From: Zygnema circumcarinatum SAG 698-1b
Taxonomy: Eukaryota; Plantae; Zygnematophyceae
Reading direction: 5' to 3'
NCBI GenBank assembly: GCA_037447605.1
Contig: CM074819.1
Coordinates: 1,572,297 to 1,636,296 of the forward strand
DNA: 64,000 nt
A program made the position numbers and the translations under genes. This document shows, in pieces, positions 26,903-63,942 of this stretch (positions within the stretch are counted from its first letter, which is position 1; every line of letters begins with the position of its first letter). Under the pieces are notes generated by a model. It did no database searches. It was not told where the DNA came from and saw only the letters and a list, made by a program, of their open reading frames with translations.

Positions 26903-30605
<3,703 letters not shown>

Positions 30606-31241: not shown

Positions 31242-38182
<6,941 letters not shown>

Positions 38183-39508: not shown

Positions 39509-40359
39509 ATGGATTCGCATCAACTTGGCAGAATTGAAGCGTACGAAAAATCTGTACGCCTCTTGGAAGAGGCAGCGGAGGGTGGGAGAATGGAGCAAAG
39601 CTGGGAGGTGGAGGCCAACGCATGGCTTGGCCTTGCAGATTTGGCGATAACCCAAGTTAAGCACTTGCATAAAGTGCGCATGAATCTTCAAACAGGGGGA
39701 AACGTGAGGCCAAATTTCACATGCTCCATTCTTTTGTGGTTTATGGACACCTTTCTTACGTATGTTCAGTAAAAAAATTCAATACTGTCACGAGCAATAA
39801 ATTTGTTTCGAATGTTAATTTCGAAAACTTGTCAGCCACTGATTCCCTTTTCAGAGTTGAAATAGCAAAACAGTACACACTCGAATTTCAGATTTCTTTC
39901 ATCAATTCATTGGTCAGCCCCCCCTCCCCCCCCAAAAACTGAAATCCTGGTCCCGCCCTTGTGTAGTTTGTTGCTCGGGAAGAACAACTCCGCCTTCTCG
40001 TCGATGCCAAACAACATTGCCAACATGTTGCACACCATGAAGCGCCATGTGTTCGTACCAAGACTTCGTTGGGCCGCCGCGCTCAAAGGCTGTTAGACGA
40101 TGACCTCCCTGCGCTTGAAGCGATGGTTCGCGAAGCGCCATTTTGGCAGACTGTGACTGATGAAGAGAGACGCCAAATCAAAGAGGCTATGGCGCTTCCC
40201 GCAAAGCACTGGTACAGGTGTCCCAACGGGCACACGTACGCCATAGGCGAGTGCGGAGGGGCCAATGAGGAGTCGAATTGTTCAGAGTGCGGGGCGGTTG
40301 TAGGAGGGAGAGCTTATGGTCTCGCGGCTGGAAATGAAAGAGACAATAGCATGGGATGA
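39509..40359 (+). CDS. Stand-alone RZ-type zinc-finger protein (195 aa, 2 exons), partial paralog of the ZNFX1 C-terminus
   Basis: Exon 1 39509-39703, GT-AG intron 39704-39966, exon 2 39967-40359. HWYRCPNGHTYAIGECGGANEESNCSECGAVVGG is an RZ finger. The phase-0 intron is at the same position as the last ZNFX1 intron. Confidence 0.85.
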
Positions 40360-40933: not shown

Positions 40934-42066
40934 TAGGGATGGCTTAATTACGACTATATAATCTATATTATATTATATAACTGTGACGACTAAATAACGG
41001 CTGTTATATAATACTTTACAACGCCTTTACAACATGTACGGTCGTACGATTGTACGGTATTATGCGGTGAAGACAGATGTAGCGTAACGGAGCTGCGTTT
41101 GACGGATCCGCGCCCGTTCAGTTGTACTTGACATGTTCATATTCAGTGTCACGGACCGGCCTGATCCAGGAATTGCCGACGGAAAATGCGAGACGGCGGC
41201 GCCATTTGTTGGCGGCCCACGGGACAGCACACCATCCAGCTAGGCGCACTCGGAAGCGCCGCNNNNNNNNNNCGGACAGATTCTGTACCTCCCCTCTGGC
41301 CTTCCTGTTCCTTTCCCCAACGAACGCATGGAGATTCTGGATGTCGCCCACGATTCCCAGCCCGGCGGATTCCACCTTGGCCAGAAGAAGATGGTCGCTC
41401 TGCTGCAGGAGCGTTATTATTGGCCCGGCCTCCATGGCGCGGTGAGCCGCTACATCGACACCTGCACCCGCTGCCAACGCGGCAAGCGCTCTGCTCCCCC
41501 CGACCGCCAACCCCTGGAGATGGGTGAGATCCCAATACGCGGCGTCGCCGAAGACTGGAACATCGACACCTTTTCTATTCCCCAGCTCGGCACCCCCTCT
41601 GGCTACATTCGAGTCTTCCTAGCCGTGGACAGATACACCAAGTGGGTGGANNNNNNNNNNGATCCCTACGTCTTCCGCTGCGCGTACCTCTGAATCTCCC
41701 GGATCCTGGCTCTATGCTGCAGGCAGACCCACAGGACCAACACAACCCTTCGTCAGTTTCAGCACGGACGCGCGAGTGGCCGTACAGCACCTGCAACTAG
41801 CTCAGCAGTCTCCTCTTAACCCCACTTATCTTGTGCTACACAGAGTGAACCAGACGGACGCATTTCGCAACGCCAACGCCAAAACGACCTAATTTTGGTA
41901 TGGTACGGTCTGGTATGGTACGACCGTACGAGTACGGTCGTTAATTGTTCAAAACAAGTGGGTATAATATATGTAATAAAGTGTTTTACTTTGTACTATA
42001 TTACTACTTTTAAACCCGTTGTAAAGTATATAATATAGTCGGACTTTATAACGCGGGCCATCCCTA
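40934..42066. mobile_element. Non-autonomous hAT (Ac/Ds-like) element
   Basis: TIR TAGGGATGGC (40934-40943) pairs with GCCATCCCTA (42057-42066), like the Ac/Ds TAGGGATG terminus. Exact 8-bp TSD GTCGGGAC at 40926-40933 and 42067-42074. Inverted subterminal blocks TACTTTACAACG and GTACGGTCGTAC are present. Confidence 0.9.
41273..41650 (+). mobile_element. Ty3/Gypsy-type integrase fragment (H2C2 zinc-binding domain plus start of the rve core)
   Basis: ILDVAHDSQPGGFHLGQKKMVALLQERYYWPGLHGAVSRYIDTCTRCQRGK...WNIDTF...FLAVDRYTKW. Bounded by N gaps on both sides. Confidence 0.88.
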
Positions 42067-43591
42067 GTCGGGACAAGCCGGCGGTCGTTGACCGTCGCTG
42101 TTTGTTGACTTATACGGCGGAATGCTGTCGGTGGATTTTGGATTCTAGCGACAGGAAGTGGCAGCCAATGAGCGGGCGTGACGTAGGGGTCCGTACTCTG
42201 ACGTTACTGGCTAATCATGGCTAACCACATGGTAACCAAAAAATGACTTTATGGAGGGCAGTTGACCGCTCATTGCTCGCCTTCGAAAAGTTGACTCGAG
42301 GGGCATTCGGAGAAAGTTGAGAATGACGTGGATCAATGGGTGACTGCCACATCGGACAGCTGTGAGATTTGTGATTACGTGGCGGTCGGTTATTGGTTTA
42401 CGCATTATTCGGTACCGCACCGTCGACTGAATTTTGACCGATGACGATAGGTCGAAATTATTTTTTTCAATGGCGGCCAGACATCGGTCAGCCTAAATGT
42501 GACACGTTTCTGTCCCTCATTCGTCGACCGACAGCCGAAAGGTCAGGAAAAAAGCAGAATTTTTTTCGATTGGTCGAAATAAATTGTCGTATGTGCCGTT
42601 CGCACGGTCGGGCACCCGTTCCGTAACTCTCAAAAATATTTTCTCTGCTGCTCAGATAAAATTTAATTCTCAATGTAAATATTTCTGACATTCTGATCCC
42701 TTTCCTTCCATCCTTTTTCACTTCCCACTCTGGGAAAATTTGTTTTATCCTGCCCGTAGACGCGACCCCTTTCGACTGAAAATTTATACAAGAAGTTTTT
42801 TCCTTAAAAAAAACGTTTTTCTGCCCGTCGCTGGGCCTCCCCCCCTCCCAGAGCGGCGAGCTCGGGACTTTTTTATCTAATTTTGTGGCAGAGGGGGAGG
42901 TGGGAGGGGAGGTCTCGGAACCCTAATTTTTCTTTTCTTTAAAGGGAAAATTTACCTACTATTTAGGATTTAGGGTTTTTGGAGCTGCAAAGGGGAGAGA
43001 GCCTATTGGGGTTACTCCTGCCTTCCCCCACCCCCCCCTCTCCCTTATTTATTTATTTATTCTTTAAGGGAGGAGGAGAGAGCAGATAAGTGAACTGACT
43101 GACTTAACTGACTTGAGAAGGAGGAGGAAATTTCAGCCGATGGGGCGTCTCTAATTGGTTGAAAAAGGGTAGAAATCTCTTTTTTTTGGCTAATTCAGCT
43201 AACCCTAATCTTGTGATATCCTCCTCTGAAAGGGAGGGAGATGGTGAAGTGAAGCTACTGGTTAGTTAGTTAGTTAAATGATCTTGACCATCAGCAGCCA
43301 TGAAAGATTCAGACCCATTTTTGTCTTTTTGACATCACGTAGAAGGCCATGCATTGTAGCTGCTCGAAAACCGGTTAACCAACGGTCTGTCTAACCGACT
43401 AAGTGGCTGACTGTCCAAACTAGCCAACTCGGAGTTCCTTGGGTAAAAAATAGGTCAATTTTTTTAACATACTCTTGGTCTCAGGACGCTCCTTATTACT
43501 GTTTTTTCTTTTTTTTTTTTTAAGTTCTTAATACTCGTGGTCCTCAGGGAGGTGCTCATTACTGTAGTTTTTTTTTTTTTTTAAGTTGTTA

Positions 43592-45536
43592 ATGGCGTTT
43601 CCAGCCTCTCGGCGGACGGTGAGAAACTCTCTCTTTTCCCGCCAGACGCAGTCCGATGTCGGCCATGGGTCCCCGAAGGAGAGTCTCAAGGAGGGCAGCT
43701 CTTCAGAAACGCAAAAAGGCCCACAATGGGCCTCGCATAATTCCGTAATTTTTGGATCTTCAAAGCAAAAACCGGCGACATTTGACGGATTCCTCCAAAG
43801 GGTGTGCGGAAATGATGCTTCGGAAACGACCCACATCGGAAACCCACTTGAGGAAAATGTTGATTCGAGTGGGTCTGCATTGCATGGCGCGAGGAGCGAG
43901 AATAGGGCGGGCTTGGCGAGGCCAGGTGGCATGCTGGGAATGGTCCAATCGGGGAAAGGAGGGTCCCCTAAGCTCACTGATGGCTCAGTTGAGTACGCAA
44001 TTGAGCCCGACAGCATTTCCGGATTTGATATTAGGAAAGACTCCATAATCTTGAATCGGCCGTCGAATCTCAGTGATAGTGCTTTGCATGAGAGAGGGAG
44101 TCCGCAAAAACCCATGTCGAAAAGTGAACCATTTTCCGGAGATGTTGCATCTCCGACTGGTTCAGGGGGAGCTCTTAGAGCAGAGCAGCAAAGCAAGCAT
44201 CCCTCTAATAGACAGTTAGATTTAAGTACTGGAGACAGATTGGGGTCTTGCAGGAGGTTTCAAAAGGATGGTGAGTGGGAGGCGAGAGGGGGGTTGGTGG
44301 CAGTTCTATGGGACCCCGAGCCAAGAGAAGGGAGAGAGGTGTTGTTAGAGAGAGAGAGAGAGGCTCTGCTTGTGGCAGAGAAAGAGGCGGAGCGTCGGAA
44401 GGAGAGAGGAGAATTAATAATGAGTTCACTCGAGTCGCATCCTCTGGCTACACGGTTAACCGACTTACAAATTACGCGGCTGGTTGATGAGCTTCGGTCG
44501 GAGGACAGTTCGAAAAGGAAGGATGCAGTTCATCAACTGAGAATGCTGGCGAAATATTCCGAGGAAAACCGAGGTTTAATCGCAGATGTAGGTGGAATTG
44601 AGCCTTTGGGAAAGCTGCTAAGTGATAGCGATGATAGTATTGTATCTGAAGTTGTGACTGCACTGCTGAACCTTTCAATTCACAGTGGGAACAAAAAGAT
44701 CATGCATGGAGTGATTGAGCCATTAGTCAAAATGTTGGAGCACAAATCATGGGATACAAATGAGAATGCCGCTGCTACTTTGTTTAGTCTTTCAGTTCTC
44801 GACGAGTATAAGATCAAAATTGGAGCTTCAGGGGCTATTCCCTTCCTTACAGACATCCTCCGGAAGGGTTCAGAGCAAGGACAGAGGGATGCATGCAAAG
44901 CCCTTTTTAACCTCTCCATTCTCAGTACAAACAAATGGAGACTTGTTGAAGCAGGAGCTGTAGAAGTCCTAGTCAACCTTCTCCAAGAGCCTGCATCGGG
45001 AATGGCGGAGAAAGCAGTTTCAGTTTTGGCTAACTTGGCCACCATTCCGGAAGGGAGAGAAGCTTTAGCAGATGCATTCGACGGAATTTCTGGTTTAGTT
45101 GAAGTGGTCGAGTCGGGACTCCCCAGAGGGAAGGAGAATGCAGCGGCTGCTTTGTGGCATTTGGCCAAAAACGATCCCACACATCGCAAGCTGATTCTGC
45201 AGGAAGTCGTTATTCCGCCGCTTGTTGCTCTCGCGCAGACCGGAACAAGCAGAGCAAAGGAGAAGGTGGGTCTATTCTTTCTTTAATTTGAGCTTTTTCC
45301 CAATTTTCCGTACCTTCATTTGGGGTTCTCAAGTTGTTTTTTCTTAGTTTTATCTCCTAGAGGGTCTTGGGTGTGCGTTGGGAATGCATTTTGTCTGTTT
45401 TTGTCGCACATCATGAGATGTGATATCACATCATCTTCATTCACACATCGTGACGTCATCGTCTGACGTCATGTGATCTCTGTGGTTTGTGCAGGCCAAC
45501 CTACTGTTGACCGACTTCCGAGACAAGTGCGCGTAA
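43592..45536 (+). CDS. Armadillo-repeat protein, PUB4-like ARM domain; no U-box seen
   Basis: ITRLVDEL...LRMLAKYSEENR...GGIEPL...VTALLNLSI...ENAAATLFSLS...IGASGAIPFL...DACKALFNLS...EAGAV...EKAVSVLANLA...GKENAAAALW...IPPLVAL...RAKEK. Intron about 45266-45494, last exon ANLLLTDFRDKCA*. Confidence 0.9.
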
Positions 45537-48401: not shown

Positions 48402-51400
48402 CTACAACCCTTCCATGCTGTCATCTCTCTCATTGCCCGCCGCAAGAAGGTGTCCTCCCCCTCCCACAACCGCCCCACACTCAGGACACGTCGACTGTTC
48501 CATAGCCCCCCCACAGTCGCCTATGGCATATGTGTGCCCATTGGGACACCTGTACCAATGCCCCGCTCCAAAGTTCATTGCCTCTCTTATTTTCCGCTTC
48601 TCGTCGATCGTTACAGGCAACCAAGTTGGGGCCCCACGAACCCTAATTTCAAGGGCAGGGAGATCGTCTTGTAGCTGTTTCCGAGCGAAGTCGCCCAATG
48701 TATCCTTAGTACGAACAGACTGCATTTCATGGTGGGCTACATATCGGAAATGTTGTCTGGCTTCAGTAAGAAGGCGGAGTTGCTCCTCTTGGACGGCAAT
48801 CTATACAGAAAAAGCAAACACACAGCACTGAATAATCAATGCCTTGAATTAATTATACTAAGGAGTTTCAACCTGAAAGCGAGCTGAATTCACAGAACAG
48901 TCAAGAGTATGTGAAAAAAATTCTCACATTCTTATCCATTTGAGGATATATACGCACTCCCTGTAAACCCTTCACTCGGCTTATTACCAACCCTGCAAGG
49001 CCCAATCTTGCAGTAGCCTCCACAAGCCAGCTTTGCTGCTTGTTCGCCAACTCCATCCCCTTATTGAAGCAGTCCATCCCATCTTCATACACTGCATTTA
49101 TACGCAGTAGATGACGCTCCAAAATATCCCCAAGCTCTCCCTCTTGCATGTTCTTAACTAAATTAGACAGTGCAAGAAACATAGATTTGAACTTCACAAG
49201 CATAGAAAGCTCCCAAGCTTTGCCAAAGAGGATGAATGCTTCAGAAGTAGTTCGAACATCAGGATGAGGAATAAAGCCTGCATGTTGCTGCAAATGTCGC
49301 AAATTGAAGTCCGCTTCTTCCAAATCTTCAAAACCAAGAGACCTGCTTATCGCGACAAGCGTCGCTTCATAAGCCTGTTTTGTGGGATGGTGTTCACAGG
49401 ACTTGACAAAATTCCGAATTTTCTGAACGTTCGCATTTACTTTCTCCGTAAATCCGGCCCTCATTGGCGTCCCTTCTTGAAGTTCAGCGAGCTCATTTCG
49501 CAATCCTGCTAAAGTTTCTTCATAGTTCCCAAGCTCACTTCTCGCAGCCTGAATAAACTTCCTCTCCGATTGGTCCAGCATCGCCTTGTTAATCATCCTC
49601 CCATATCGTTTCACCTTTGTGATGGGCGCCCTGCATTCAGGGCAACCTTTTAACTCAACTAAGTCACTGCCAAGCAGCAACGGAGAGTCCCAATCTTCCT
49701 CCTCCTCTTCAACTTCCTCCGGCAGGGATACATTGCTTTCTCTGCCCTCTTCCCTCCCTCGCTCTCCTTCGCTAGCATTCGAAATCTCGCCTTCTTCCAT
49801 TATCTCTCCTTCCTCCTCACTGCCACTCTCCACTCCTCCAACCCCACCATCCTTTGATCTGCTTAATGAAACTCCTCCACTCTCACTCTCTTCCTCATCA
49901 CTCACTTGCCTCCTCTTCCAGACCCTCCTTAGCTTCCGACTGTAGTACTTACGGAGCCCAACGTGCATGTCCATGTTGGAAACTATGTAAGCATGTCCAC
50001 AGCCAAGCACTACTAAAGGATCCTCCTCAAGATCCACTTCCTCCAAAGTACTCATCATATATAGATCTACTACAAGCCCCTTGTTCTTAGGAGTCCCACA
50101 TGCTTGACAGTAAGCCATTGGGGGACAATCCTCTCCACAAATAGAAGGGCATTGGTGCCCACAACTTAGAAGCCTCGTACACCTCTTATCGCAGGGTAAA
50201 CGGGTACATGGAGCTCCACAAGGGAGCCGACATTTTCCGCGATGTGAACAAAACCAAGTGCATGGCTCCGCGCAAACTGCACACGGTTTGTGGCATTTTT
50301 TTCCGCAGGTGCTATGGGAGCATGCAACTGGGCAATTCCTTTGGCATGGAGGGCATGGCTTGCCCTCATGGCATGTTGAGACGCATACATGCCCACATAG
50401 GAGGTTTCTCTCACATTGTTGTCTGCAAGGGGGGTGAATTTTTCGGGAGTCTGTTGTCGAATGTGGAGAATTCAAAGTAAAGCATTCGCCACATTTTGCT
50501 TTGCATAAATGACCACACTCCGCAATTGGGTGCCCGCAAACTGCCCGACATTTTTTGGGCTCGTACTGAACAATCGCAGCTTCTGAGCAGTCAACAGGTT
50601 GCTTATGGTTGCATATACCCATTGTTATCTCCACCTTTTTCCTGCAAGAAAATTTACACACAAAGCTTTGTTACCACAGATTGCCCACGGACTTTGCTTT
50701 TCAAAAAGAAATCAAAACTAGAGCTATATTCTTGCTGAGATGGCTATGTTAAAGGAAACCACAGTGGGTTCATTACCGGCATGGAATACGGTCCAGATGG
50801 TTTGTCTCGCTGCATCTGACACTTGACGCAATATGGCCGCACGGCAGTTTTACGGAACTGATGGCAACGCTGCATGGGCCACATGGATCGCCACATGCAA
50901 GAGGGCATGGATGGCTCCATGCGCACTCAGTTAGAGGGCGAAGCCGTTCACATTGTTTGTTGCAGCGAACTGTCACATGGTCTCGATCGTCAGGATGACA
51001 TCTGCATGGGCCAGAACGATCGTCGGTAATGCCCATTAACGTGAGAGTGAGATTAAGAGTGATTACCAGGAATATAAGTTAAGGAATGTCTGTCCAATAC
51101 TTTAGGCTGCCATGCACAAACACTTGAAGAGTAATACGTGTTTAGAAGTGAAGGAATGGTAAGAAAGGTGTACATTTATATGTAGGATATTATAGTACAA
51201 TGTAGGATATTTTAAAGGCAGAGTGAGAGGAATTCCGCACACCTTCGAGGACATGCATGCCCACATGGCATCCGAAAGTTGCATGACGAAGCGCAGCCTC
51301 CATCCCCAGCAAGCTCCTCAAAGTCGCTCGCTTTAGCGATTCGGGTTTCGTTCTCCGGATGCGCCACACATTTCAGAAGTAGTGTGGGGCCCACACAATC

Positions 51401-54302
51401 ATCTTTTTTCAGGATTTCGATGACTTGGGGCCACATTTTTGAGTTTTCATGAAGACATAAACAGTCCGTGTTTCCTGCATGCGGAACCACTTGGTGATGT
51501 AAATATGTGCCATACAAACATCTATGTAGATATGGTTCAAGGATTCTTGAAGCATCTATAACAACCAGGCATGGCTGTTTGTTGCGCACTTGAAAATGGT
51601 TAAGGCAATAGAAAGAGACAATAAGAAAGCTTGGCAAAGAATTACATGAGCGATGGGTGGTATCTAATGGCAGGAGTTGGGAAACGAATTGACATAAGTA
51701 CCCACCAACTAGATACATTCCATGCCGAGCTCGTGAAAGGAGGACATTGATTCTGTTTGGAGATTTCAAAAAGCCGATATGTCCTCCAGACGTGTTTCGG
51801 ACCAATGACAAGATAACGATAGTGCTCTCCTCCCCTTGAAAACTGCATTCACCAAAGATAGGTTAACATGTCCAACTTTTCGAAGTTCACAATGAATCAC
51901 GTTCTCATGCGAACATCATTCAAGGAAATTCATCATTTGCACGTTTAACATCTCTCTCACATGGAACGCCAAAAGTCATATCTCTCACAACTCAAGGTAC
52001 AGTTTTCTCACAAGGGGGCCCATTATTTGTTACGAACAGCTTCACAAGCAAAAAATTATATGATCATTGTATCTCAAAGCCGAGAAGCCTTACTTGTCAA
52101 TAGTGGCAAGCCGCACGCTTTCGTTCATCGATACCACCTTAGGTTGAGCATATTCCAATCCCATTCCCGGTGTCTCCCTGCTCTCCCCTCTCTCCTCTTC
52201 ATCACTCTCCCTCTGCCTCTCTCTCTCCTCCATCTCCTTCACGGTCTCTTCATCTTTTTCACTAAGTGTCACATACACAGATTTCGACAATTCCGCTCGG
52301 ATCTTCAACAACTGGCCCACATATGGAGTCAAAATTGTTATCTCTCCCGCTCCATATCCCTGCTTGAGGAGATACTTCGCCAGACCCATCACCATTTTGA
52401 CCTCTTCCTGGTTTGACTTTGACTTTAACCCCCCTTCTCCTCCTGTTTCCGGATTCGTATGATGCCAGAAATAAAGGTTTTGGGCCATTCCCCGGACGAA
52501 TGGGTAGCAGCCAACGGTTGGCAAATGGTCCTTTAGAGCTGGATATATTGTATTCCGGATGAGGTTGGCTATAGAGGGCCTCATACGCCTCTGTGTTGCG
52601 AGAGTGTAGACAGGGAAATTTTTACTTTCTGCTAGGCGCTCAAAGAGGGAGAGGTCAAGGTTAAAGCCTTGCCCGGAATCCGTACTAAGCTCGTAAACTT
52701 CCGTCTTCGGCCGAAGCTGACGGTGATCACCTGAATAATTCACAGGAAAAATAAATAAACAAAAGAACATAATGTGGACCAGAAACAGTATTAAAGTCGT
52801 GATAGGAATGACCTTAAAAAGGCTCAAAAGCCGAGAAGTTTCTTGTAGATAGAACTCCAAAAACGCTTTTAAAAACTCTAATGGGTCAGCGTTGGAGGAT
52901 TGATAAAAAGAAGAAATTTAGGAAGCCAAGCAGCATACCGATAAGGATGAGATGATCGGTTGAAGAGGACAGAGATGTAAGGACATGGGCTTCCAGCACC
53001 TCTGCTGCCTCCTCTACCACTACCACTCTCGGAGCGAAAGCAGTGACAAGTCGCTGAAATTTTGCTACTCCACTTGTAGTCATACCCACAACTTGGGCAT
53101 TTTTCAGCACTTCTAGGTCTCCCATTTCCCTTATTTCTTCAAGCCGCTCCTGCTGCCTGCCGATTGAACAGAAAGAAAACAGACATGAGAGCTAACAAAT
53201 GAGATATATTTATTTATTTGATTTATTTATTCATGCGAGAGGAGAGAAGTAAACATTCCAAACACTAACTTCCTTGGAATTCCAGCATCATCATGATCCC
53301 TAATTCCATCAAAGTACTCAAGTGTGTTCAAAGTAGTCAAAAGATAAAGAAGTACTCCTGCACCCAATGAGCCCAAGTGAATTTCTATCAAAAGGATGAA
53401 GTCCGCAGTGAACTTGAACTTACGTCTTGTAGGCTTCCATATTCACTTTGATCCCATCTAAATTCATCCCATGAATCTCCTTCCGCCACTTTTTAATAAG
53501 CCTCTTCCTCACATTTCGATGAACATTCCAAAATTCCTCCTCTTGCACTTCCCCAAACACCACAGATATGCCCCTCCGCACAACATTCCAGGCGGTAGGC
53601 TCATTAGAAGGCTGCAAGGTGTTCTCCTCCATAGCAAAGGGTCCTCCTCTTCGCTTTCCTCCTCTCGGAGTATCGAAAGTTGGGGTTGGGTAGCCCTCAG
53701 ACCATCTTTCCCAGTTTAAGGCTCCAAAGTCATTCTGGAACGAGAATCAGAATCACGACGATGGTTGCTTCAGATTTTTCTTCTTTAAAATATCTACTCT
53801 ATAGTTTTAACACTTCCTATTTCCAGCTATAGAAAGATTGGATATGAAAGATTGTTTTCTCTGTTTTTAAGAAGGAATGATAGCTCACCTGCACCACTTC
53901 ATCATCGATTGACCCATCCCCGAGGGGGTCCGTAAGGGTGGCGAAAAAGTTAGGGTGATTCAGTTCAAGGTAGTCGCTCACATCCGGCCATGAGAGCTCA
54001 TAGTCTTCATCCCCCAGGAGACGGGCCTGCCCTCCCCTTATCTTAAGCTCCAACAGTTCCATTTTCTTAATGCATTGCCACTCCTGCCATCGCTGGGCTG
54101 CAGCCAACCAGAGATCTTGCTCAGGCGTATAAGAGGGCTGTAGCAGATAACTCTAATAATGCAGGAAGGTGAATGTTGTCAAAGAAGACAATGTCCCCTC
54201 CATCGTCTCTTTGCGTTTCGTTCTCACTCATCCTCTCTTCTCACTCCACTACCCGTTTCCCTTTTCTCTCCTCAGCTTAAAAGCATTCATTTTGAACCCC
54301 CC

Positions 54303-54361
<59 letters not shown>

Positions 54362-54942
54362 AGGGAGCTGCAAGACTCACAGGGAGATTTGAGGCTCTTT
54401 GAATTCTCTCGCATAATAGAACGCAAGTTGCGCGGCTCCAATGCAGCACTTCGGCTCCGTCCTCCCACTCGCACAACCTGCAGCCCCCCCACCCCCCCCC
54501 CCCAAATGTAAAATAAAATAATCTCAAAAAACTCAAATTACTCAAATTCACGCCTGCAAGCCTGTTAAAAACCTCCAAAAAGTGCAATGTAACTGCTTAC
54601 AAAACCTTCCCACAGTGAACCCTGATGCACACAAATCAGAATCTCGCCCTCCTTACATTGGTTATTCCGTTTGCGATGAGCCCCTCCAAGAACTGATCCA
54701 ACGCATGGTTGGTAAAGCACACACACAGTATGGGCTCTAAGGATGGCTTTGTCTCCCCCCCCACTCTCTGAAATAAGCCCCTCCGTCGCCCCCCAGAGTT
54801 GTGCAGAAGAAGCTGCACAATTTTGATACCGAGATATGTCTGCGAAAAAAATTGACAAGTTAAAATCATGCAATTAAATCTAATTTGATAATGTGAAAAA
54901 AGGCATTCCAAGAGATTGAGGAGAGACGAGAGAGAGGAGAGA

Positions 54943-55001
<59 letters not shown>

Positions 55002-58000
55002 TGAGGAGAGGGGAGAAGCGAGGAGAAAAGGAAGAGGCGAGAGAGCGGAGAGAAGCGAGGAGACGAGAGAACGAGAGTGAGGGAGCGAAGAGAGGAGAGA
55101 GGAGAGTGGGAGCAGAGGAGAGCAAAATCACTTAGTGTAAACAGAAGGGCTTACTTTGCCGGTTCCTGGAGGCCCTTGGATGAGTACTAATTCATCTGTG
55201 AGAGCTGCATGGAGAGCCTCTAACTGAGGCCTATCGAGAGTGGAGAGAGCCTCTAATGCTTCGTAGGGAAAAGCATCAGGTGATGAAATAGCCACATCTT
55301 GTAAACTCAGTTTGAGGTCGATTGTATCGCTCCCTTTATCGGTTGAGATCAACGGGGTCAGATCGTATCTGCCATAGAAACGAAGATGAAGTGTATACCG
55401 ACAAAGCATCCATGAGCAGAAGAGAAGATATGCAAAGTAGCTCACGTATATAGGATGTTTAGGATTTCTAAGGGTTTTAAAGGTTTCTCTCACCTTGTCT
55501 CCTCTGACATGTATGCGGGAATGCCGACATTTGTCATGGTTTGAACTCTCCCAGTTTCATGAAGAATGTACTTAGCAAAGGGAAAATTCATTTCTGAAAG
55601 GCCCTGCAGAGCCTTCAATATCGGCTTGTAAGCGAAAAAATTCGCCGCTGCTTCCATCATTAGCATCTCCTCCGCCGGACTAATTCCATTTTGAAATGCA
55701 TCAAGAAGCGCTTCATTGAATGGGCTTCTGTCACAGGGTGTGACTCCTATTTTAGGGCGTCCCTTTTCGGGAGCAAGAAGTTTCGGATCCCTATAGCTTA
55801 CTGTCGCCAATATCAGGCGAGAATTGACGTTTTCTTCACTCAAAGTCCCTCCTCCTGCATGTTGTCCTGCTACTCCGGATCCGCTCGAATTGTTAGTTCC
55901 TTGCAAGCGGCTTTGAAAGGTGATGCATATGAGGGAACCTGCTTGGAGTCTTCGAGAATACTTCCAGTACTCCATTCTGAAAATAAGAGGAATACAAAGT
56001 GTTAGTAAGACTGTATTCTAGAAAAACAAGTGGCATGCTTTACCCCTCCCCCTCCCCCTTCCCTCACCCCCGCTCCTGCACTCACCTATCCGCTCGCCTC
56101 TTTTGCCAGGCCTGGTCATCAAACGCAAGTAGATAGTACACTCCGCACTTGCTGTCTGCTTGCACTCCCACACACTCCACATTTCTGAATAGGAGGAGCT
56201 CCACTCCCTCTCCCCCCCTCTCTCCCAAAGCTCCCTTCATAGGGAGATACGCAGCTGCTTCACTCCGACTGAGCCGGACCTCTCCTCCCCTTCTTCCCCG
56301 AGCTCCGCCACGGCTACCTTCCGTAGAAGGGGGAGGAATAGACCCCCTCAGAGAATTAAAGACGAGCACTTTCTCCCATAAGGGAGCGATGAGATCGTGC
56401 CGAAGGAGGCGGAATTGAATGTCTAAGTGGCGAGCCACAGAGCCTTCTGGAAGGTGGTGTTGGAAGGAGGGAGAGTTTCGAGGGAGGTAAGGAGAGCGAG
56501 TGCTCAGCACCTCTCCCGCTGTGGGAGCCACTTGTATCTGTTCCTCTTTTCATAAGTGTTAGGGCGGGATTGATCCAACAAAGTAGGTGGTAGACTGAAA
56601 TGTCTCAAAATTTGTAATGTTGGGAAAAAAAATCGTCAATCATTGAAAAAGTTGAAGATACCTGTTGCAAATATTGTGAATTAGATTTGCGATGCTTTTT
56701 TATTTTTTTTTAAGAAAAAGGAGAAGACCTGGCGGAAGTCTTCAAAGTCGTTGTCGTGCCTGGGAATTCCATCAATGCTAAGATCGCCAGGTCCGTCCAA
56801 ATCCTCGGTTATTACTGACGTCTGAGCAGCTGTTCCCACACAAAACGGGGAGAGAGACAAGGGAGACAAGGGGGGAAGAGAGGAGAGAGAGAGAGTGGGA
56901 AAGGAAAAATGCAGATTATGTTTGGCCGATTTAGCAGAAAAGAAAGGGAAAGCAGAATCACTTCACAATCCACAAAATCAGTTAATAAAGTCCTCATCAC
57001 AGCAAGAAAAATAAAACATGAAAAATAGTTGTAGGGGGAAGACCTTCAGAAAAAACTTTAACTTACCATTTGGAAAGAGAGTAATCCTCTTCAACCGGGC
57101 TGCCTCTCTCTCGACTCTAGTCCTCTCCTGCCGTACCTTCGTTCTTGCAGCGCGTAAAACCAGCTCAAAACTATCGTTCAGACCTCGATACTGTCCCCCT
57201 AAAACAGGCTCCTTTTGCTGCCACGTGTCTATCATCTGCTTCATTCTGTCCATCTGATCCACCAGTCCCTGCCTATAAGCACTCTCTTGAAATCTTTGCA
57301 TAATCTCGCGAAAATATGAGACTACGGGTGTGAATATGTCCATCCACACGTGTGGAAGAAGTTGGAGAAAGGCCTCATTTGCGACTGAACTGGGCCCCCC
57401 TCCCCCCTGAAACTCCAAATTTCTCTTCATGCGAGCCCCTGAGTTTGTAATATCGGCATAGAGTGCGGCGTCTACTAGAGGTACGCCGGTTGTGAGCAGT
57501 TCTAAGCAACATACGAGATATTCATCGAATCCAACGGTGTTGTGAACTGCTGCAAGGATTGAATTCACGGCGGAAGACATCGGGTTGTTGCAAAATACCG
57601 GCTGATTGTGCATAGACGATCGATGTTCACGTCGAAATGAACAGGAACAAGAGGAAAGAAAAAATTGTGAAAAGAATTGGAATTGAACATTAGTGTTAGG
57701 ATAAAGAAGGGTTTTGTCGCTATTAGAAAGTGGCAATTATGCGCGATTCACAAGAGCGGATTAGATCTCCAATCTCCATGCCTCCCTCGCCTGTTACAAG
57801 GTAGTAAACATGCATCCTCTCTCTCTCTCTCTCTCCTCTCTTCTCTCACTCACTCTCTACGCCACTTTTGCAGCTTCTCCCTCTGCTGACCCTTCAAACT
57901 CCTCCCCTTCTCCGACTGTCCCGCATCTTGCCTAAGGACAAGCAGAAGCATCTCAAAGTGGGCCGAAATGAAAGATCAAACTGAGAAGAAGAAAAATACC

Positions 58001-59447
58001 GTACATTACGAGACAAGCCATCGTGGAAGCCTAAATATATGCAGCATTTCAATACACATGAGTGCAGGTAAACTCACGTGTGCGATGAGAGACAAAAGAG
58101 GCAGAACCACTGCCTGGAAGGAGACAATCATCGTATTGGTCCCTGCTTGAACTGATAAATGAGGCCCAGTCTTCACCGCCTCTTGACAAATAGATGCAAT
58201 TTTTTGTCGACCGAATTTCTCATCAGATCCCAGCAGCAATACAAGCTCTGGGCACAAGGAATACCGCAAAAAGGCACAAGCGGGGGGCAAGGGGGGGCGT
58301 CACTTTAGAAAGTGAAACATCGACAATGAATTGAATGGGAGAATGCTAGCAAAAATAAAGTAAGCACCATTGCAGTGGAAAGACTGCGAGGAGCAAGTCA
58401 AGCTAAGACTATTCAGCGCAAGATTTTGTTTGCAAATTTACCTGACATTTCACAACTGTGCATAGAAAATATGAACCTCCTCATCTGATGTTGATTAGGA
58501 AATGCGGCTGGAGAATCCAAATATATTCGAATATTTGGAACATCTGTGCTTCTCCGCTCTCCTCCGTGTCTCCCTCCCTCCCTTGAGCTATTCCCCATTG
58601 GTTCGTCTGCGTGAAAATTACTTCCCAGAAGATAATTAGGGAGAGGCAAGAAGAAGGAACAACCGCTAAAAGGTATTGCGATAGACCAATGTATCAAATA
58701 AGGAGTTTAAAATGAACGAAACGATACCATACTTTAGAATGTCTTATGATATAAATAGAATGTGATACTGTGAAGCACTGCTGACTATCTGATCTGGCAG
58801 AATGAGGGCTCAGACCTATACTGGCTCAAGTTAAAAAGAAATGAGCTCAACCTCGGGCGATTCAGATTGATTGATGTTCAACACCACTTAAAATAAACAG
58901 CAATTGTTTTCATCAAAAAATTAGTGGATGTTCATCGCGATAGTGATAGGAAACGAGAATTCAAGTGAAAAAAAGGATGGAATGCCCCTGTTCACGAACA
59001 TACTTGAGGGGTCCGGAATGATGCAGTCACATCACATCACATCATCACATAACTTGACCTTGTATACAGCCGGGCATGCCTCGTATTCACATTAACGAAA
59101 TGAAAAATATATACACAAAAAAACTTAAAAAAAGGTATGATTCGCCAAAAAAAATGGAATCAATCATATGCCAGTTGGTAACAGATTGCGAATTGCGATG
59201 TCGCCAAGTTATCTCATACTCAAAGGGCACCAATTCTCCAAACCCTGAAATCCTGAAAACCCTGATCCTTCAAGGCCTGAACATCACCTTCTGGTCTCCC
59301 AAAGCCTCTCCCTCTCCCACGCCCCCTCCCTCTCCATCCTCCTCTCTCGCCTCTCCCGCCTCTCCTTCCTCTCCCTCTTCCAGGTCCGCCAAAGCCGCTG
59401 GAGCTTTCACCTGAATCCCTTCCGTAAACCTCCCAGCCTCCTCCCAT
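48402..59447 (-). CDS. ZNFX1: ZNFX1/Hrr1-type SF1 (UPF1-like) RNA helicase with NFX1 zinc fingers, split RING-like region and C-terminal RZ finger; about 17-18 exons
   Basis: RGG-rich exon 1, GPG...RHDNDF...PYLP, HLDIQFRLLRHD, LIQGPPGTGKT, CFTNHALDQFLE, VGMTTSG, VVEEAAE, IGDHRQLRP, SLFERL, QRRMRP, YxxQ, ATID-FQGEE, NRINVLLSRARHG, multiple CGHxC NFX1 fingers, CGH...CPECR...RYG, and WYRCPNGHTYAIGDCGGAME. Confidence 0.95.
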
Positions 59448-60954: not shown

Positions 60955-63942
60955 TCATGTCCTCTGCCGGGCCCTCTCTATGAGCGGCCGGAGGTGCTTC
61001 TTCTCCGCCAAAATTTTGAGGAAGTTGAAGAGGAAGGGGATGTAGTTGTGCTTCCGCCGAATGTTCTCCGTCCGCCACTTCTTGTACTTCTCCTCCTCCG
61101 CCGCAATGTGCTCTGGAAAATCGCAGAAAGACCCCATCTCTACTTGAGTTCACCTATGGCCGATCGATCTATGGTCATGCTTTACAGTTATGTTGCTTTC
61201 GGATCTTCCAGAACTTAACAGATCTCTAAGAATTAACGAAAGTGAGCCTTGCAAGTCTGTTTAAGGTAAGGCTAAAGTTAAAATTAGTTTAGGTTAGTTA
61301 GATTAGTTAAGTCTAAACTAAACTAGACTAAGCTTAGGTTAGTTTGTAGTACCGCCCTAAAGTCCCTATCTTGTTCATTCTTCCAGAACTCCACCACCCT
61401 CATCCCTACTCCCTCTCTCCCACCTCTCTCCCACCTCTCTCCCACCTCTCTCCCACCTCTCTCCCACCTCTCTCCCACCTCTCTCCCACCTCTCTCCCAC
61501 CTCGCTCACACCTCTCTCCCACCTCTCGCCCACCTCTCGCCCACCTTTCTCCCACCTCTCTCCCACCTCTCTCCCACCTCTCTCCCACCTCTCTCCCACC
61601 TCTCTCCCACCTCCCTCCCACCTCTCTCCCACTTCCCATGCCAACAAACTTCCCACCTGTCAGAGTGGCAATCTGAGCCTCCACATGAGCAATGTCCTCC
61701 CGAATAGCCGCCCCGGCTGCTCCCGTTCCCGAGTCCACATCCATGGCTGCCTCCCCTTGGTTCAACCCTCCTGATCCAATCACCTTCTCCAACCGACTTT
61801 GCAGCTGCGCTCTAAGACCCTCAAACTTCGCCAACTGCTCCTCCATAACCTCCTTTCTGTTGCGGACAATAGCCATAAGGTTGAACCTAATCTCGCTCTG
61901 CGAATACTTTTCAATCCTTTCTTGAATGACTGGCTGAACCTTTTTCAGCCAATCAAGGGGGTCCTTTCCACAGTCTCCCAAACTGATGGGTCCCTCCTTT
62001 AGCCCATCAAGCTCGTAAAGGACCCCATTGACAGGCAAGTAGCTGATGAAGTGGTAGACATCATCATCCTTCTCTCCCTGCTTTGTTTCCTCCGCTACAA
62101 TTGCTTCCGGTCGAGCAAAACTGTTATGAGCTGTTCGAATTGCTTCACTGTTATTGATCGCAAGCCCCCTCAGCTCTGGAGAAAAATCTTTGGTGAACTC
62201 TCGCAGAGCATTCAGCTCCGGACCGATTTCAATTTGCTGACAATTCATTAGGATGGAGAGAATGGCTTGCGTAGCGCATGCATTGTTTATTACCTGAACA
62301 GAAAAAGCAGGACAGCAGATACTTTCTTAATTATGTGCAATCACTTCCATGGAGTTCGCATGCGAAACTTAATCCGTTTTTTCTACGGATATCTACTTCT
62401 GCAGTTACTGTGATAGAACTGCAGTTGAGCTGATGGTTAAACTGCATACAGACCTGACTTGCAAAGAAAAGGCCACTGCTGCTGAAGTCCTTAAGAACAG
62501 GACGAGTGTCGGTTTCACCGGGACGCCACTTGAATAAGAATACAAGGCCATAGACAGGGCTGCACACAAACAGGTGAAACAGACTTGGCATAAGTGCAAA
62601 GAGGAAAACTAAGAAGCTCCAAAGGCTGCATCATTTAGCTCTCCTCTTTCTCTGAGCCCTTCTGCGTGTCTTTTTCAGCATCTGCTGTTAATCTGGCCGA
62701 ATTCGTGTTTATGATGATAGTTGTTACCAATTGGAAAGCTACTCCATATGCAAACTATCACTAAACATGAGGTTACCTGTTTTGAGGATTACCTGAGCTG
62801 CTCCAACATATCCAGGTCTAAACTGTAGAGCTCCTCCACCTGTAATCTCACAATACAGGTAACCTCATGCATTGGACTGCTGATTCTCACAGAACAGAAG
62901 AGCAAGAAGCTTCACATGTTTGGCAAGCACAGGCAAGATGTTGTTTCCTGTGCAACAAAAGTTGGCGTTTTTTTAGTGAATGACATTCAGCATTCAGAAA
63001 GCTGCACGATGAATATTTATGAGGGTCTCCTCTACAATGGATTTTCCATACAAGAATTGGAGAGACAACGGGGTACCTGAACTCCTTTCACTTGCATTTG
63101 CTGAATCAATTCCGTAAAGACACCTGCAAATTGGGTTAAAGAGAATTCCATCAATTCTTTAACTAAACACAAGAATCCCAATATTGAAGGGCCAAACAAA
63201 AATATTGGCATGTGTGCATGCGCTAGTTGGGCCATAGATGTGATTATTTAGTGAAAGAGGAAAGAAATTCCTCTTAGATTTCCCCAGTATAAAAAATAGG
63301 GGCATTCTTCTACACCAGGCTCAATTGCATTGAAGAAGTAGACTCCAAAAAACAAGGATTGCTTCAGAATGCCTAAACCTAAACTGCTTTTAAAATTGGT
63401 CTTCAGAAATAAAGAATAACCCGTTCAATCCAAATGTATGCGCCCTAAAATTGACAAACAGCCCTCTGTTTGATATTGGAACATTTCAGAGGCTGTCATT
63501 GAAAACCATTACAGGAAAAGCAGTTCTTTAAACTCCAAAGGAATGAAAGAAGGCGATGAACTCTTTCTGTCAAATTTTCCAACGAATTTGAACCATTGAT
63601 TTGTATTTTCGATAATAATATGCGTAATATCTTAATTATTTTTGAAATTGCAGGTAAAGGGAGCAAATTATCGCACATACTACACATCCGAATGTTGGAA
63701 TAAAAGAAGCGGGAGAGGGAATAGAGGAGAGGGAGTGAGATTTTGTGGAACGGGAGAAAGCGAAAGCAAGAGAGGAAGGAGGTCTAAACGAGAGGAAAAA
63801 TGAGAAAGTGCAGCGAGGGGTAGAGAGAGAGAGAGCGCGAGAGAGAGAGTAAGAGAGAAAGAGAGAAAGAGAAAAAAAATAGACAGAGAGAGGGAGAGAG
63901 AGAGAGCTTACCAGGGTCCGACTCGATAGTACACCAAGACAT
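60955..63942 (-). CDS. UCHL5: Ubiquitin C-terminal hydrolase L5/UCH37 (plant UCH2-like), 6 exons
   Basis: [11 protein letters not shown] / VFTELI / VEELYSLD / [11 protein letters not shown] / [14 protein letters not shown] (catalytic Cys), YHFISY (His), YELDGL (Asp), and the ULD tail [15 protein letters not shown]. Confidence 0.96.
61413..61632. repeat. 11-bp minisatellite (CTCTCTCCCAC) x20 in the last UCH37 intron
   Basis: 220 bp = 20 units with few substitutions, starting just after the GT donor on the - strand. Confidence 0.93.

What the first reader, a model, noticed from the sequence alone, without database searches (positions are those of the whole stretch)
48402..59447. Complete ZNFX1 RNA-sensing helicase-E3 ligase in a streptophyte genome
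Seen: all SF1 motifs, an NFX1 finger array, a RING-like region and an RZ finger with the full Cys/His set. Known: ZNFX1/Hrr1/ZNFX-1 proteins act in antiviral RNA sensing and in RdRP-coupled small-RNA inheritance in animals and fungi. Inference: I do not recall a canonical ZNFX1 in angiosperm models, so this could be an ancestral RNA-immunity branch kept in algal relatives of land plants. The exon-1 RGG tract suggests condensate or RNA binding.
Basis: partly seen in the sequence, partly recalled or inferred. Interest (0 to 1): 0.72.

Follow-up and report, generated by a model that had tools for sequence, protein, structure and literature searches.

The report
Intact ZNFX1 helicase-ligase gene in alga
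This is an intact 19-exon gene for a full-length ZNFX1-type RNA helicase and ubiquitin ligase in a green alga related to land plants; other green algae already have it in public databases, but my searches found none in land plants.

Summary
Window 59447-48402 (minus strand) carries a frame-consistent, all GT-AG, 19-exon gene of 2,213 codons. It has every ZNFX1 hallmark:
- an RG-rich N-terminus;
- the Pfam ZNFX1 domain;
- an SF1 helicase core with the family's unusual EEAA Walker B;
- a Cys/His finger stalk;
- a RING-like single-zinc domain;
- an RZ finger with all six key residues at human spacing.

The helicase matches human ZNFX1 (E 2.7e-25) far better than any other solved helicase, so the SDE3/MOV10 and NFXL readings are rejected.

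Its nearest relatives are Closterium (Zygnematophyceae), then Klebsormidium and Chlorokybus. Chlorophytes, brown algae, oomycetes, fungi, amoebae and animals also carry the full architecture. No land-plant protein appeared in any of four searches, which supports loss in land plants but does not prove it.

ZNFX1 in streptophyte algae is already in databases; Klebsormidium's is annotated "NF-X1 zinc finger and helicase domain protein". This is therefore a new member of a known kind.

Function (RNA-dependent ubiquitin ligase in RNA surveillance) is inferred from human ZNFX1, not tested. The joined protein was not built or searched. The scan had already noted the stand-alone RZ mini-gene 8 kb away.

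The parts
59288..59447 (-). Exon 1: start codon and RG-rich tract ([29 protein letters not shown] at 59381-59295)
   Evidence: First ATG after an in-frame stop. Donor AAG|GTGATG. A similar RGG-rich N-terminus precedes the same conserved motif in Closterium NIES-68 P0185. There is no RNA evidence, and this is the least certain exon.
58442..58606 (-). Exon 2: N-terminal conserved motif (FPNQHQMRRFIF)
   Evidence: Matches Closterium 'FTNQFQMRMFVQ' and Chlorokybus 'SAPQHQIRRFLQ'. Splice sites.
58078..58247 (-). Exon 3: start of the helical N-terminal domain
   Evidence: tblastn with Closterium and Klebsormidium proteins, 42-53% identity. CAG|GTAAAT donor upstream and GTGAGT donor downstream.
57067..57601 (-). 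Exon 4: helical N-terminal domain
   Evidence: Collinear tblastn hits to Closterium and Chlorokybus. Junctions.
56729..56829 (-). Exon 5: RHDNDFEDFR motif (56761-56732)
   Evidence: 72% identity to Klebsormidium over 25 residues. The donor GTCTTC is weak; the junction was chosen by collinearity with homologues.
56086..56537 (-). Exon 6: LDIQFRLLRHDL motif, start of the ZNFX1-specific region
   Evidence: 41-59% identity to streptophyte homologues.
55494..55976 (-). Exon 7: Pfam ZNFX1 domain (PF25396)
   Evidence: E 1.5e-6, 28.6 bits against a cut-off of 27. Weak match to human ZNFX1 residues 583-626.
55155..55368 (-). Exon 8: helicase motif I (Walker A GPPGTGK, 55175-55155)
   Evidence: AAA_11 E 1.6e-4; motif read directly.
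54657..54839 (-). Exon 9: helicase motif Ia (TNHALDQFLEGL)
   Evidence: 57-62% identity to Closterium and Klebsormidium.
54381..54477 (-). Exon 10: VVRVGGRSRS segment
   Evidence: Weak but repeated matches to four Closterium proteins. Acceptor CTGCAG| was placed by hand from the reading frame; the model stays frame-consistent.
53889..54097 (-). Exon 11: variable insertion inside the helicase
   Evidence: Weak collinear matches, 'SWPDVSDYLELNHPNFFATL' against Closterium and Klebsormidium. Splice sites.
53424..53734 (-). Exon 12: variable insertion inside the helicase
   Evidence: 'NWERWSEGYP' against Closterium 'NWGRWKRGLP'. Splice sites.
52939..53156 (-). Exon 13: helicase motif II with the deviant Walker B (VVVEEAAEVLE, 53023-52991)
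   Evidence: AAA_11 E 4.5e-7. EEAA is the human ZNFX1 Walker B. 153 of 178 full-length homologues have EEA[AGS] and none has DEA.
52094..52730 (-). Exon 14: helicase motifs III and IV, second RecA lobe
   Evidence: AAA_12 E 8e-18. Human ZNFX1 9q9z_A E 2.7e-25, next best Aquarius-type at 1.3e-5. 56-62% identity to Closterium.
51706..51842 (-). Exon 15: helicase motifs V and VI (FQGEE; VLLSRARHGMYLV)
   Evidence: AAA_12 E 6e-8. 68-79% identity to streptophyte homologues.
51243..51474 (-). Exon 16: linker and first Cys/His finger (CGHACPR)
   Evidence: 37-48% identity to homologues. Junctions.
50777..51001 (-). Exon 17: Cys/His fingers (CAWSHPCPLAC, CGHIASSVRC)
   Evidence: Regex and direct reading. 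Collinear with the family's finger stalk.
48928..50641 (-). Exon 18 (571 codons): six more fingers, then the RING-like single-zinc domain, then a helical bundle. The RING-like domain runs LGCGHAY 50007-49987 to CPECRAPI 49644-49621 and is split by an acidic, disordered loop of about 45-70 residues.
   Evidence: Invariant Cys/His in alignment A1. AlphaFold2 model pLDDT 86.9, loop residues 251-296 below 50. The domain model matches only RING-type E3 domains.
48402..48800 (-). Exon 19: ubiquitin-binding-helix region and RZ finger (HWYRCPNGH 48560-48534, DCGG 48518-48507, CPEC 48488-48477, His within 48464-48450), then the stop codon at 48404-48402
   Evidence: PF20173 E 2.7e-24. RNF213 RZ finger in the PDB at E 3e-9 with all six positions identical. 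Spacing equals human ZNFX1.

Best explanation
The locus is a functional orthologue of ZNFX1. It is one 19-exon gene (about 2,213 residues) inherited vertically in the green lineage.

Shown here:
- The reading frame is intact across all exons.
- Every diagnostic domain and catalytic residue of ZNFX1 is present and in the same order as in the human protein.

Inferred from human ZNFX1 biochemistry:
- The SF1 core binds and translocates on RNA using ATP. Its Walker B is the family's EEAA form, and the long insertion (exons 10-12) may regulate RNA access.
- The rigid Cys/His finger stalk holds the C-terminal ligase module.
- The RING-like single-zinc (Miz/SP-RING-type) domain recruits a charged E2.
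- Ubiquitin is passed on either directly or via the RZ-finger cysteine (DCGG) paired with the distal histidine.
- The RG-rich N-terminus adds non-specific RNA binding or self-association.

The most likely cellular role is RNA surveillance: antiviral RNA sensing, or support of RdRP-dependent small-RNA amplification. Which of the two applies in this alga is unknown.
For: - Gene model: 19 exons, all GT-AG, phases consistent, one terminal stop, 6,642 nt. The length fits Chlorokybus (2,216 aa), Closterium (2,147-2,446) and Klebsormidium (2,042).
- Homology runs collinearly from residue ~1 to the C-terminus of the Closterium proteins.
- Domains: Pfam RZ, AAA_11, AAA_12 and ZNFX1.
- Human ZNFX1 is by far the best solved match to the helicase.
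- EEAA Walker B matches the human protein and 153 of 178 full-length homologues.
- RZ residues and spacing are identical to human ZNFX1 and RNF213.
- The RING-like domain has invariant C-H-D...C-C-R-R and a RING-type fold.
- Single-exon trees place it beside the Closterium clade: SH-like 94 and 89 with FastTree, 80/86 with IQ-TREE.
- Neighbours are ordinary nuclear genes, including a plant-type ARM_PUB repeat protein.
Against:
- Exon 1, the weak GTCTTC donor of exon 5, the hand-placed acceptor of exon 10 and the exon 15/16 junction rest on homology and splice consensus only.
- The acidic loop in exon 18 could hide an in-frame intron.
- Pfam zf-NF-X1 does not score the fingers, and phmmer finds no solved match for the finger exon.
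- Support for the sister relation to Closterium is moderate, not starred, and a long-branch Ichthyophonus sequence intrudes.
- No biochemical or genetic data exist for any green-lineage ZNFX1 in the searched literature.
Confidence: 0.9

Rival explanations
1. The gene is a real ZNFX1, but the phyletic pattern is ordinary. Land plants would also carry orthologues that my searches missed because they are unannotated, truncated, fast-evolving or outside the listed hits. Nothing would then have been lost on the way to land plants.
For: - Only the best 120 of 1,044 hits were listed, and the search scored only the 8,000 candidates sharing most words.
- The C-terminal search had low sensitivity, with 17 hits.
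- Land-plant genomes were not searched at the DNA level.
Against: - The query came from Zygnematophyceae, the algal class closest to land plants by established phylogeny. Klebsormidium scored 899 bits, and fungi and oomycetes at 33-45% identity still made the list at 578 bits or more. A normal land-plant orthologue should rank near the top, and none of the 120 is from a land plant.
- None appeared among 322-1,025-aa proteins.
- None appeared in Atlas clusters for the RZ exon or exon 18.
- No paper in the library pairs ZNFX1 with land plants or Viridiplantae. The one paper pairing its full name with plant tissue terms concerns a fungus.
Confidence: 0.2
2. The locus is an unexpressed or decaying copy (pseudogene), or my exon model stitches together unrelated open frames.
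For: There are no RNA data. A partial duplicate of the 3' end lies 8 kb away, so the region has a history of duplication.
Against: About 2,213 codons remain open over 19 exons with canonical splice sites. All catalytic and zinc-binding residues are kept. Collinearity with homologues is complete. Chance open frames of 586 and 256 residues matching one family in order are not credible.
Confidence: 0.04
3. The helicase belongs to another SF1 branch (SDE3/MOV10, UPF1, SEN1, Aquarius), or the protein is an NFX1/NFXL transcription-factor relative that merely resembles ZNFX1.
For: AAA_11 and AAA_12 are shared by all Upf1-like helicases. Aquarius and a 5'-3' RNA helicase-like protein give weak matches.
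Against: - Human ZNFX1 scores E 2.7e-25 against 1.3e-5 for the next family, and MOV10 and UPF1 do not appear at E<=0.001.
- The Pfam ZNFX1 domain, the EEAA Walker B and the RZ finger are all present.
- NFX1/NFXL proteins have no helicase, by established knowledge.
Confidence: 0.02
4. The gene reached this alga by horizontal transfer, or the contig is a contaminant, rather than by vertical descent in streptophytes.
For: Deep branches of the single-exon trees are unresolved. Brown-algal sequences nest beside Klebsormidium and Chlorokybus at 97/83, so the family's history may include transfers.
Against: - Summed similarity falls in the expected order: Closterium > Klebsormidium > Chlorokybus > Trebouxia > others.
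- The gene has 18 spliceosomal introns and the same (CT)n-rich sequence context as its neighbours.
- It sits between a UCH-type deubiquitinase gene and a plant-type ARM_PUB gene.
Confidence: 0.03

Closest known systems
Human ZNFX1 (NFX1-type zinc finger-containing protein 1; PDB 9q9z; bioRxiv 10.1101/2025.10.14.682297)
   Same: The domain order is the same: helical N-terminal domain, SF1 helicase with EEAA Walker B and an internal insertion, Cys/His finger stalk, single-zinc RING/U-box-like (Miz) domain, helical region, then an RZ finger with identical ligand and catalytic residue spacing.
   Different: - An RG-rich N-terminal tract.
- A long acidic disordered loop inside the RING-like domain.
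- About 300 residues longer than the human protein (the human paper numbers residues up to 1918).
- Only about 40% identity in the helicase exon to animal ZNFX1-like proteins.
- There is no interferon or MAVS context in an alga, by established knowledge.
Streptophyte-algal ZNFX1 proteins already in databases: Closterium spp. (e.g. CAI5506821.1), Klebsormidium nitens 'NF-X1 zinc finger and helicase domain protein', Chlorokybus Chrsp40S05670
   Same: Full-length architecture with RZ finger. They are the closest relatives by score and by tree. Closterium NIES-68 also has an RGG-rich N-terminus.
   Different: Only 51-62% identity in the best-conserved exon, so this is a different, unsampled species. 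Closterium has several paralogues, some in tandem. This window has one full gene plus a stand-alone RZ mini-gene.
C. elegans ZNFX-1, S. pombe Hrr1 and N. crassa SAD-3 (small-RNA amplification helicases)
   Same: The same SF1 helicase family, described as orthologues acting with Argonaute and RdRP.
   Different: Hrr1 and SAD-3 are about 1,000-1,160 residues, roughly half the length of this protein. The worm protein lacks the RZ domain. The alga keeps the complete ligase module, so it resembles the vertebrate form more than these.
RNF213 (the other RZ-finger E3)
   Same: The RZ finger aligns at E 3e-9 with all six key positions conserved.
   Different: RNF213 is a dynein-like AAA+ protein, not an SF1 helicase. 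Only the finger is shared.
Plant NFXL1/NFXL2 and SDE3
   Same: NFX1-type fingers (NFXL) or an SF1 helicase acting in RNA silencing (SDE3), both from established knowledge.
   Different: NFXL proteins have no helicase and no RZ finger, and SDE3 has neither fingers nor a ligase module. Neither is the best match here.

Membership tests
ZNFX1 (full-length type) | SF1 Upf1-like helicase core with motifs I-VI | tested here: met
   AAA_11 and AAA_12 on four exons. Motifs read directly with coordinates.
ZNFX1 (full-length type) | Deviant Walker B EEAA instead of DExx | tested here: met
   VVVEEAAEVLE at 53023-52991. The human motif is EE1007AA. 153 of 178 full-length homologues share it and none has DEA.
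ZNFX1 (full-length type) | ZNFX1-specific domain (PF25396) N-terminal to the helicase | tested here: met
   E 1.5e-6, 28.6 bits against a cut-off of 27 on exon 7. The margin is narrow.
ZNFX1 (full-length type) | Helicase closer to ZNFX1 than to any other SF1 branch | tested here: met
   9q9z_A at E 2.7e-25; the next family is at 1.3e-5. No outgroup-rooted tree was built.
ZNFX1 (full-length type) | Stalk of NFX1-type zinc fingers after the helicase | tested here: inconclusive
   Nine CxHxC-type units and about 35 invariant Cys/His columns shared with the family. However, Pfam zf-NF-X1 gives no hit at E 10, and the precomputed Pfam lists of the homologues do not include a zf-NF-X1 entry.
ZNFX1 (full-length type) | Single-zinc RING/U-box-like (Miz) E3 domain | tested here: met
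   Only one Cys/His set (C214, H216, C333, C336) is invariant. In the domain model, all 50 listed VIA matches are RING-type E3 domains at Z 6.0-3.3, and Foldseek's top rows are RING domains but not significant. No SP-RING-specific match was seen.
ZNFX1 (full-length type) | C-terminal RZ finger with zinc ligands and a catalytic Cys/His pair | tested here: met
   PF20173 E 2.7e-24. Spacing equals human ZNFX1. RNF213 alignment.
ZNFX1 (full-length type) | RNA-dependent ATPase/helicase and E3 ligase activity; expression | not testable with these tools
Hrr1/SAD-3 short type | Helicase of about 1,000-1,200 residues without the C-terminal ligase module | tested here: not met
   This gene encodes about 2,213 residues with RING-like and RZ domains. 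Lengths of Hrr1 and SAD-3 are from PMC5384783.
SDE3/MOV10 | Helicase most similar to MOV10-type SF1 proteins, with no zinc-finger or ligase module | tested here: not met
   No MOV10-type chain reached E<=0.001. Fingers and an RZ finger are present.
NFX1/NFXL transcription factors | NFX1 fingers with an N-terminal PHD/RING and an R3H domain, and no helicase | tested here: not met
   A helicase is present and no R3H or PHD hit appeared in any exon.

The most novel reading that the evidence does not exclude
ZNFX1, with its complete helicase-plus-two-site ubiquitin-ligase architecture, was kept through the whole streptophyte-algal grade up to the closest algal relatives of land plants. It was then lost on the stem of land plants. 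In this alga it would work as an animal-like RNA-triggered ubiquitin-ligase sensor, possibly together with the neighbouring stand-alone RZ-finger gene.
Probability: 0.3. Interest if true: 0.55.

Novelty: new member of a known kind. Interest (0 to 1): 0.3.

Why it matters
The result places a complete ZNFX1, an RNA helicase joined to a two-site ubiquitin ligase, in a close algal relative of land plants. Together with the database hits, it points to loss of the gene in land plants.

If a DNA-level search confirms that loss, land plants shed an ancient eukaryotic RNA-surveillance enzyme that animals use in antiviral defence and that worms and fungi use in small-RNA amplification. That would be useful context for how plant RNA silencing and immunity were rewired.

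It would also give a photosynthetic system in which to ask what ZNFX1 does without interferon signalling. As a single gene it is not surprising, because orthologues in other green algae are already public.

Tried and rejected
- All searches used single exons by reference. The frame check was done exon by exon with phases and split codons only.
- Pfam zf-NF-X1 on the finger exons: no hit even at E 10.
- phmmer of the finger exon against the PDB: nothing, or a chance midkine hit, probably because of the Cys-rich composition.
- Foldseek on the whole 571-residue exon-18 model: only helical-bundle noise such as AFF4 and 14-3-3. I therefore folded the RING-like domain alone.
- N-terminal exon 4 against the PDB: no meaningful match.
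- Naming the organism: the window's own protein is not in either protein collection, with best identity 46-52%. Contig look-ups for P0008, P0016, P0091 and P0071 gave only unnamed metagenome or run assemblies.
- P0288 has exactly 2,213 residues but is only about 46% identical, so the equal length is a coincidence.
- Literature: no paper in the library discusses ZNFX1 in algae, land plants or Viridiplantae. The wheat 'ZNFX1-NFXL1' label refers to NFXL1.
- SDE3/MOV10, NFXL, pseudogene and transfer readings were considered and rejected (see rivals).


Full report
**What is there**

Between 59447 and 48402 the minus strand carries a chain of open frames whose translations read as one large protein. 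I used tblastn hits of full-length homologues as guides and required GT-AG introns with compatible phases. This gave a 19-exon model of 6,642 nt: 2,213 codons plus one terminal stop. There is no internal stop and no stop in any split codon. Introns are 109-681 nt.

The check was done exon by exon with phases. Every search used a single exon by reference.

The least certain points are:
- exon 1;
- the weak GTCTTC donor of exon 5;
- the hand-placed acceptor of exon 10;
- the exon 15/16 junction;
- whether the acidic stretch in exon 18 is all coding.

**Checking the observation**

Pfam on single exons gave the following:
- RZ finger PF20173, E 2.7e-24;
- AAA_11 and AAA_12 on four exons;
- ZNFX1 domain PF25396, E 1.5e-6, just above its cut-off.

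Motif II is VVVEEAAEVLE. This is the deviant EEAA Walker B described for human ZNFX1. It is shared by 153 of the 178 full-length homologues I collected, and none has DEA.

The RZ finger has Cys, His, Cys, Cys, Cys, His at relative positions 0, 4, 11, 20, 23 and 32. This is exactly the spacing of human C1849, H1853, C1860, C1869, C1872 and H1881. It also aligns to the RNF213 RZ finger with all six positions conserved.

The 'RING-like region' is real. In a 71-sequence alignment the residues C214, H216, D224, C333, C336, R345 and R348 of exon 18 are invariant. That leaves one Cys/His set, consistent with the single-zinc Miz-type domain reported for the human protein.

An AlphaFold2 model of exon 18 is confident (pLDDT 86.9, pTM 0.80), apart from an acidic loop at residues 251-296 that splits the domain. 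Folded alone, the domain matched only RING-type E3 domains: all 50 listed entries by VIA-align, at Z 6.0-3.3, a middling range. Foldseek's top rows were RING domains at non-significant E-values.

The finger array is the one soft point. Pfam zf-NF-X1 does not score it. It does consist of nine CxHxC-type units with about 35 invariant Cys/His columns shared with the family.

**Which family**

The best-conserved helicase exon hits human ZNFX1 (9q9z_A) at E 2.7e-25. The next family, an Aquarius-type splicing helicase, is at 1.3e-5, and MOV10 and UPF1 do not appear.

Hrr1 and SAD-3 are about half this length, and the worm protein lacks the RZ domain. This gene therefore has the complete, vertebrate-like architecture.

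**Relatives and organism**

An exhaustive HMMER search with the 586-residue exon-18 frame found 1,795 relatives. None exceeded 52% identity, so this genome's own protein is not in the collection.

The best named hits are Closterium species. A word search with a Closterium protein listed full-length, RZ-bearing proteins from the following groups:
- streptophyte algae: Closterium (several paralogues), Klebsormidium nitens (annotated 'NF-X1 zinc finger and helicase domain protein') and Chlorokybus;
- chlorophytes: Trebouxia, Bryopsis, Volvox, Gonium, Chlamydomonas eustigma and Raphidocelis;
- brown algae, oomycetes, many fungi, amoebozoans and animals.

Summed similarity to the window falls in the order Closterium > Klebsormidium > Chlorokybus > Trebouxia > others.

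Single-exon trees put the window beside the Closterium clade:
- FastTree SH-like 94 for the helicase exon;
- FastTree SH-like 89 for the finger exon;
- IQ-TREE 80/86 for the helicase exon, with a long-branch Ichthyophonus sequence intruding.

The neighbouring genes include a plant-type ARM_PUB repeat protein. I conclude that the window comes from a streptophyte alga not represented in the protein collections, and that the gene was inherited vertically. I could not name the species.

**Land plants**

No land-plant protein appeared in any of these:
- the 120 best full-length hits;
- proteins of 322-1,025 aa;
- the C-terminal search, which had low sensitivity;
- the named representatives;
- the Atlas clusters.

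The query came from the algal class closest to land plants. Fungal and oomycete orthologues at 33-45% identity still made the list, so a normal land-plant orthologue should have ranked near the top.

No paper in the library pairs ZNFX1 with land plants, Viridiplantae or algal biology. The one paper pairing its full name with plant tissue terms concerns a fungus.

This supports loss in land plants. I put absence from all land plants at about 0.8. Only annotated proteins were searched, only part of each hit list is shown, and genomes were not scanned.

**The N-terminus**

Exon 1 holds 10 RG dipeptides in 53 residues. Closterium NIES-68 has a similar RGG-rich start followed by the same conserved motif as exon 2. 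RG-rich N-termini also occur in several fungal proteins and one fish protein of the family. The tract is therefore a recurrent family trait. Its role in RNA binding or condensation is inference only.

**Mechanism**

The architecture and residues are shown here. The activity is inferred from human ZNFX1: ATP-driven RNA binding by the helicase, E2 recruitment by the RING-like domain, and ubiquitin transfer either directly or through the RZ cysteine. Biologically, an RNA-surveillance role is most likely, either antiviral or RdRP-linked small-RNA amplification as in worm and fission yeast. Nothing here distinguishes between the two.

**Verdict**

The evolutionary reading is plausible and partly supported, and the function is untested. 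ZNFX1 in streptophyte and other green algae is already in public databases, so this is a new member of a known kind and of modest interest. The earlier scan note on the stand-alone RZ mini-gene at 39509-40359 concerns the same gene family on this window. I confirmed its Pfam hit and the Tyr in place of the distal His.

Noticed in passing
window 39509-40359 (+): A stand-alone partial copy of the ZNFX1 3' end, covering the tail of exon 18 plus the RZ exon. It is convergent with ZNFX1 and 8 kb from its stop codon. Pfam RZ scores E 2.4e-22, and the distal catalytic His is replaced by Tyr. Closterium's C-terminus matches it slightly better than it matches ZNFX1's own last exon. Already noted by the scan as s1-393337.
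   Followed up: partly
window 60958-61137 (-): The C-terminal exon of a UCH37/UCH-L5-type deubiquitinase (Pfam UCH_C, E 7e-20) lies just upstream of ZNFX1 on the same strand and bounds its 5' end. With the ARM_PUB gene and the RZ mini-gene, four ubiquitin-related genes sit within 22 kb. This is probably coincidence.
   Followed up: no
window 43586-45286 (+): A single-exon ARM-repeat protein with the plant U-box ARM region (PF25598, E 1.2e-21) but no U-box hit. It lies between ZNFX1 and the RZ mini-gene.
   Followed up: no
window 41263-41693: A retroelement integrase fragment (Integrase_H2C2, E 3e-16), interrupted by two 10-N runs at 41263 and 41651. The window has six such 10-N runs in all.
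   Followed up: no
window 27543-29145: About 1.5 kb of (CT)n/(GA)n microsatellite flanked by (TA)n-like repeats. Shorter (CT)n tracts lie in many introns and intergenic stretches, including ZNFX1 introns near 55000 and 54300.
   Followed up: no
window 31245-37576 (-): Exons of a DEAH-box helicase (OB_NTP_bind, E 6e-17, and the GETGSGKT motif), a separate multi-exon gene.
   Followed up: no
proteins P0199, P0204, P0205, P0245, P0014 (brown algae) against P0194 and P0197: In the IQ-TREE helicase-exon tree the brown-algal ZNFX1 proteins nest beside Klebsormidium and Chlorokybus (97/83), not with the oomycetes, which sit among the fungi. This could reflect an old transfer between algal lineages or a single-exon artefact.
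   Followed up: no
L004 6082-11842: A metagenome scaffold whose ZNFX1 is called as two adjacent genes: a 1,231-aa helicase and a 613-aa protein carrying the RZ finger. The 613-aa product (P0071) groups with the window and Closterium in the finger-exon tree, so it may come from another unsampled streptophyte-like alga.
   Followed up: partly
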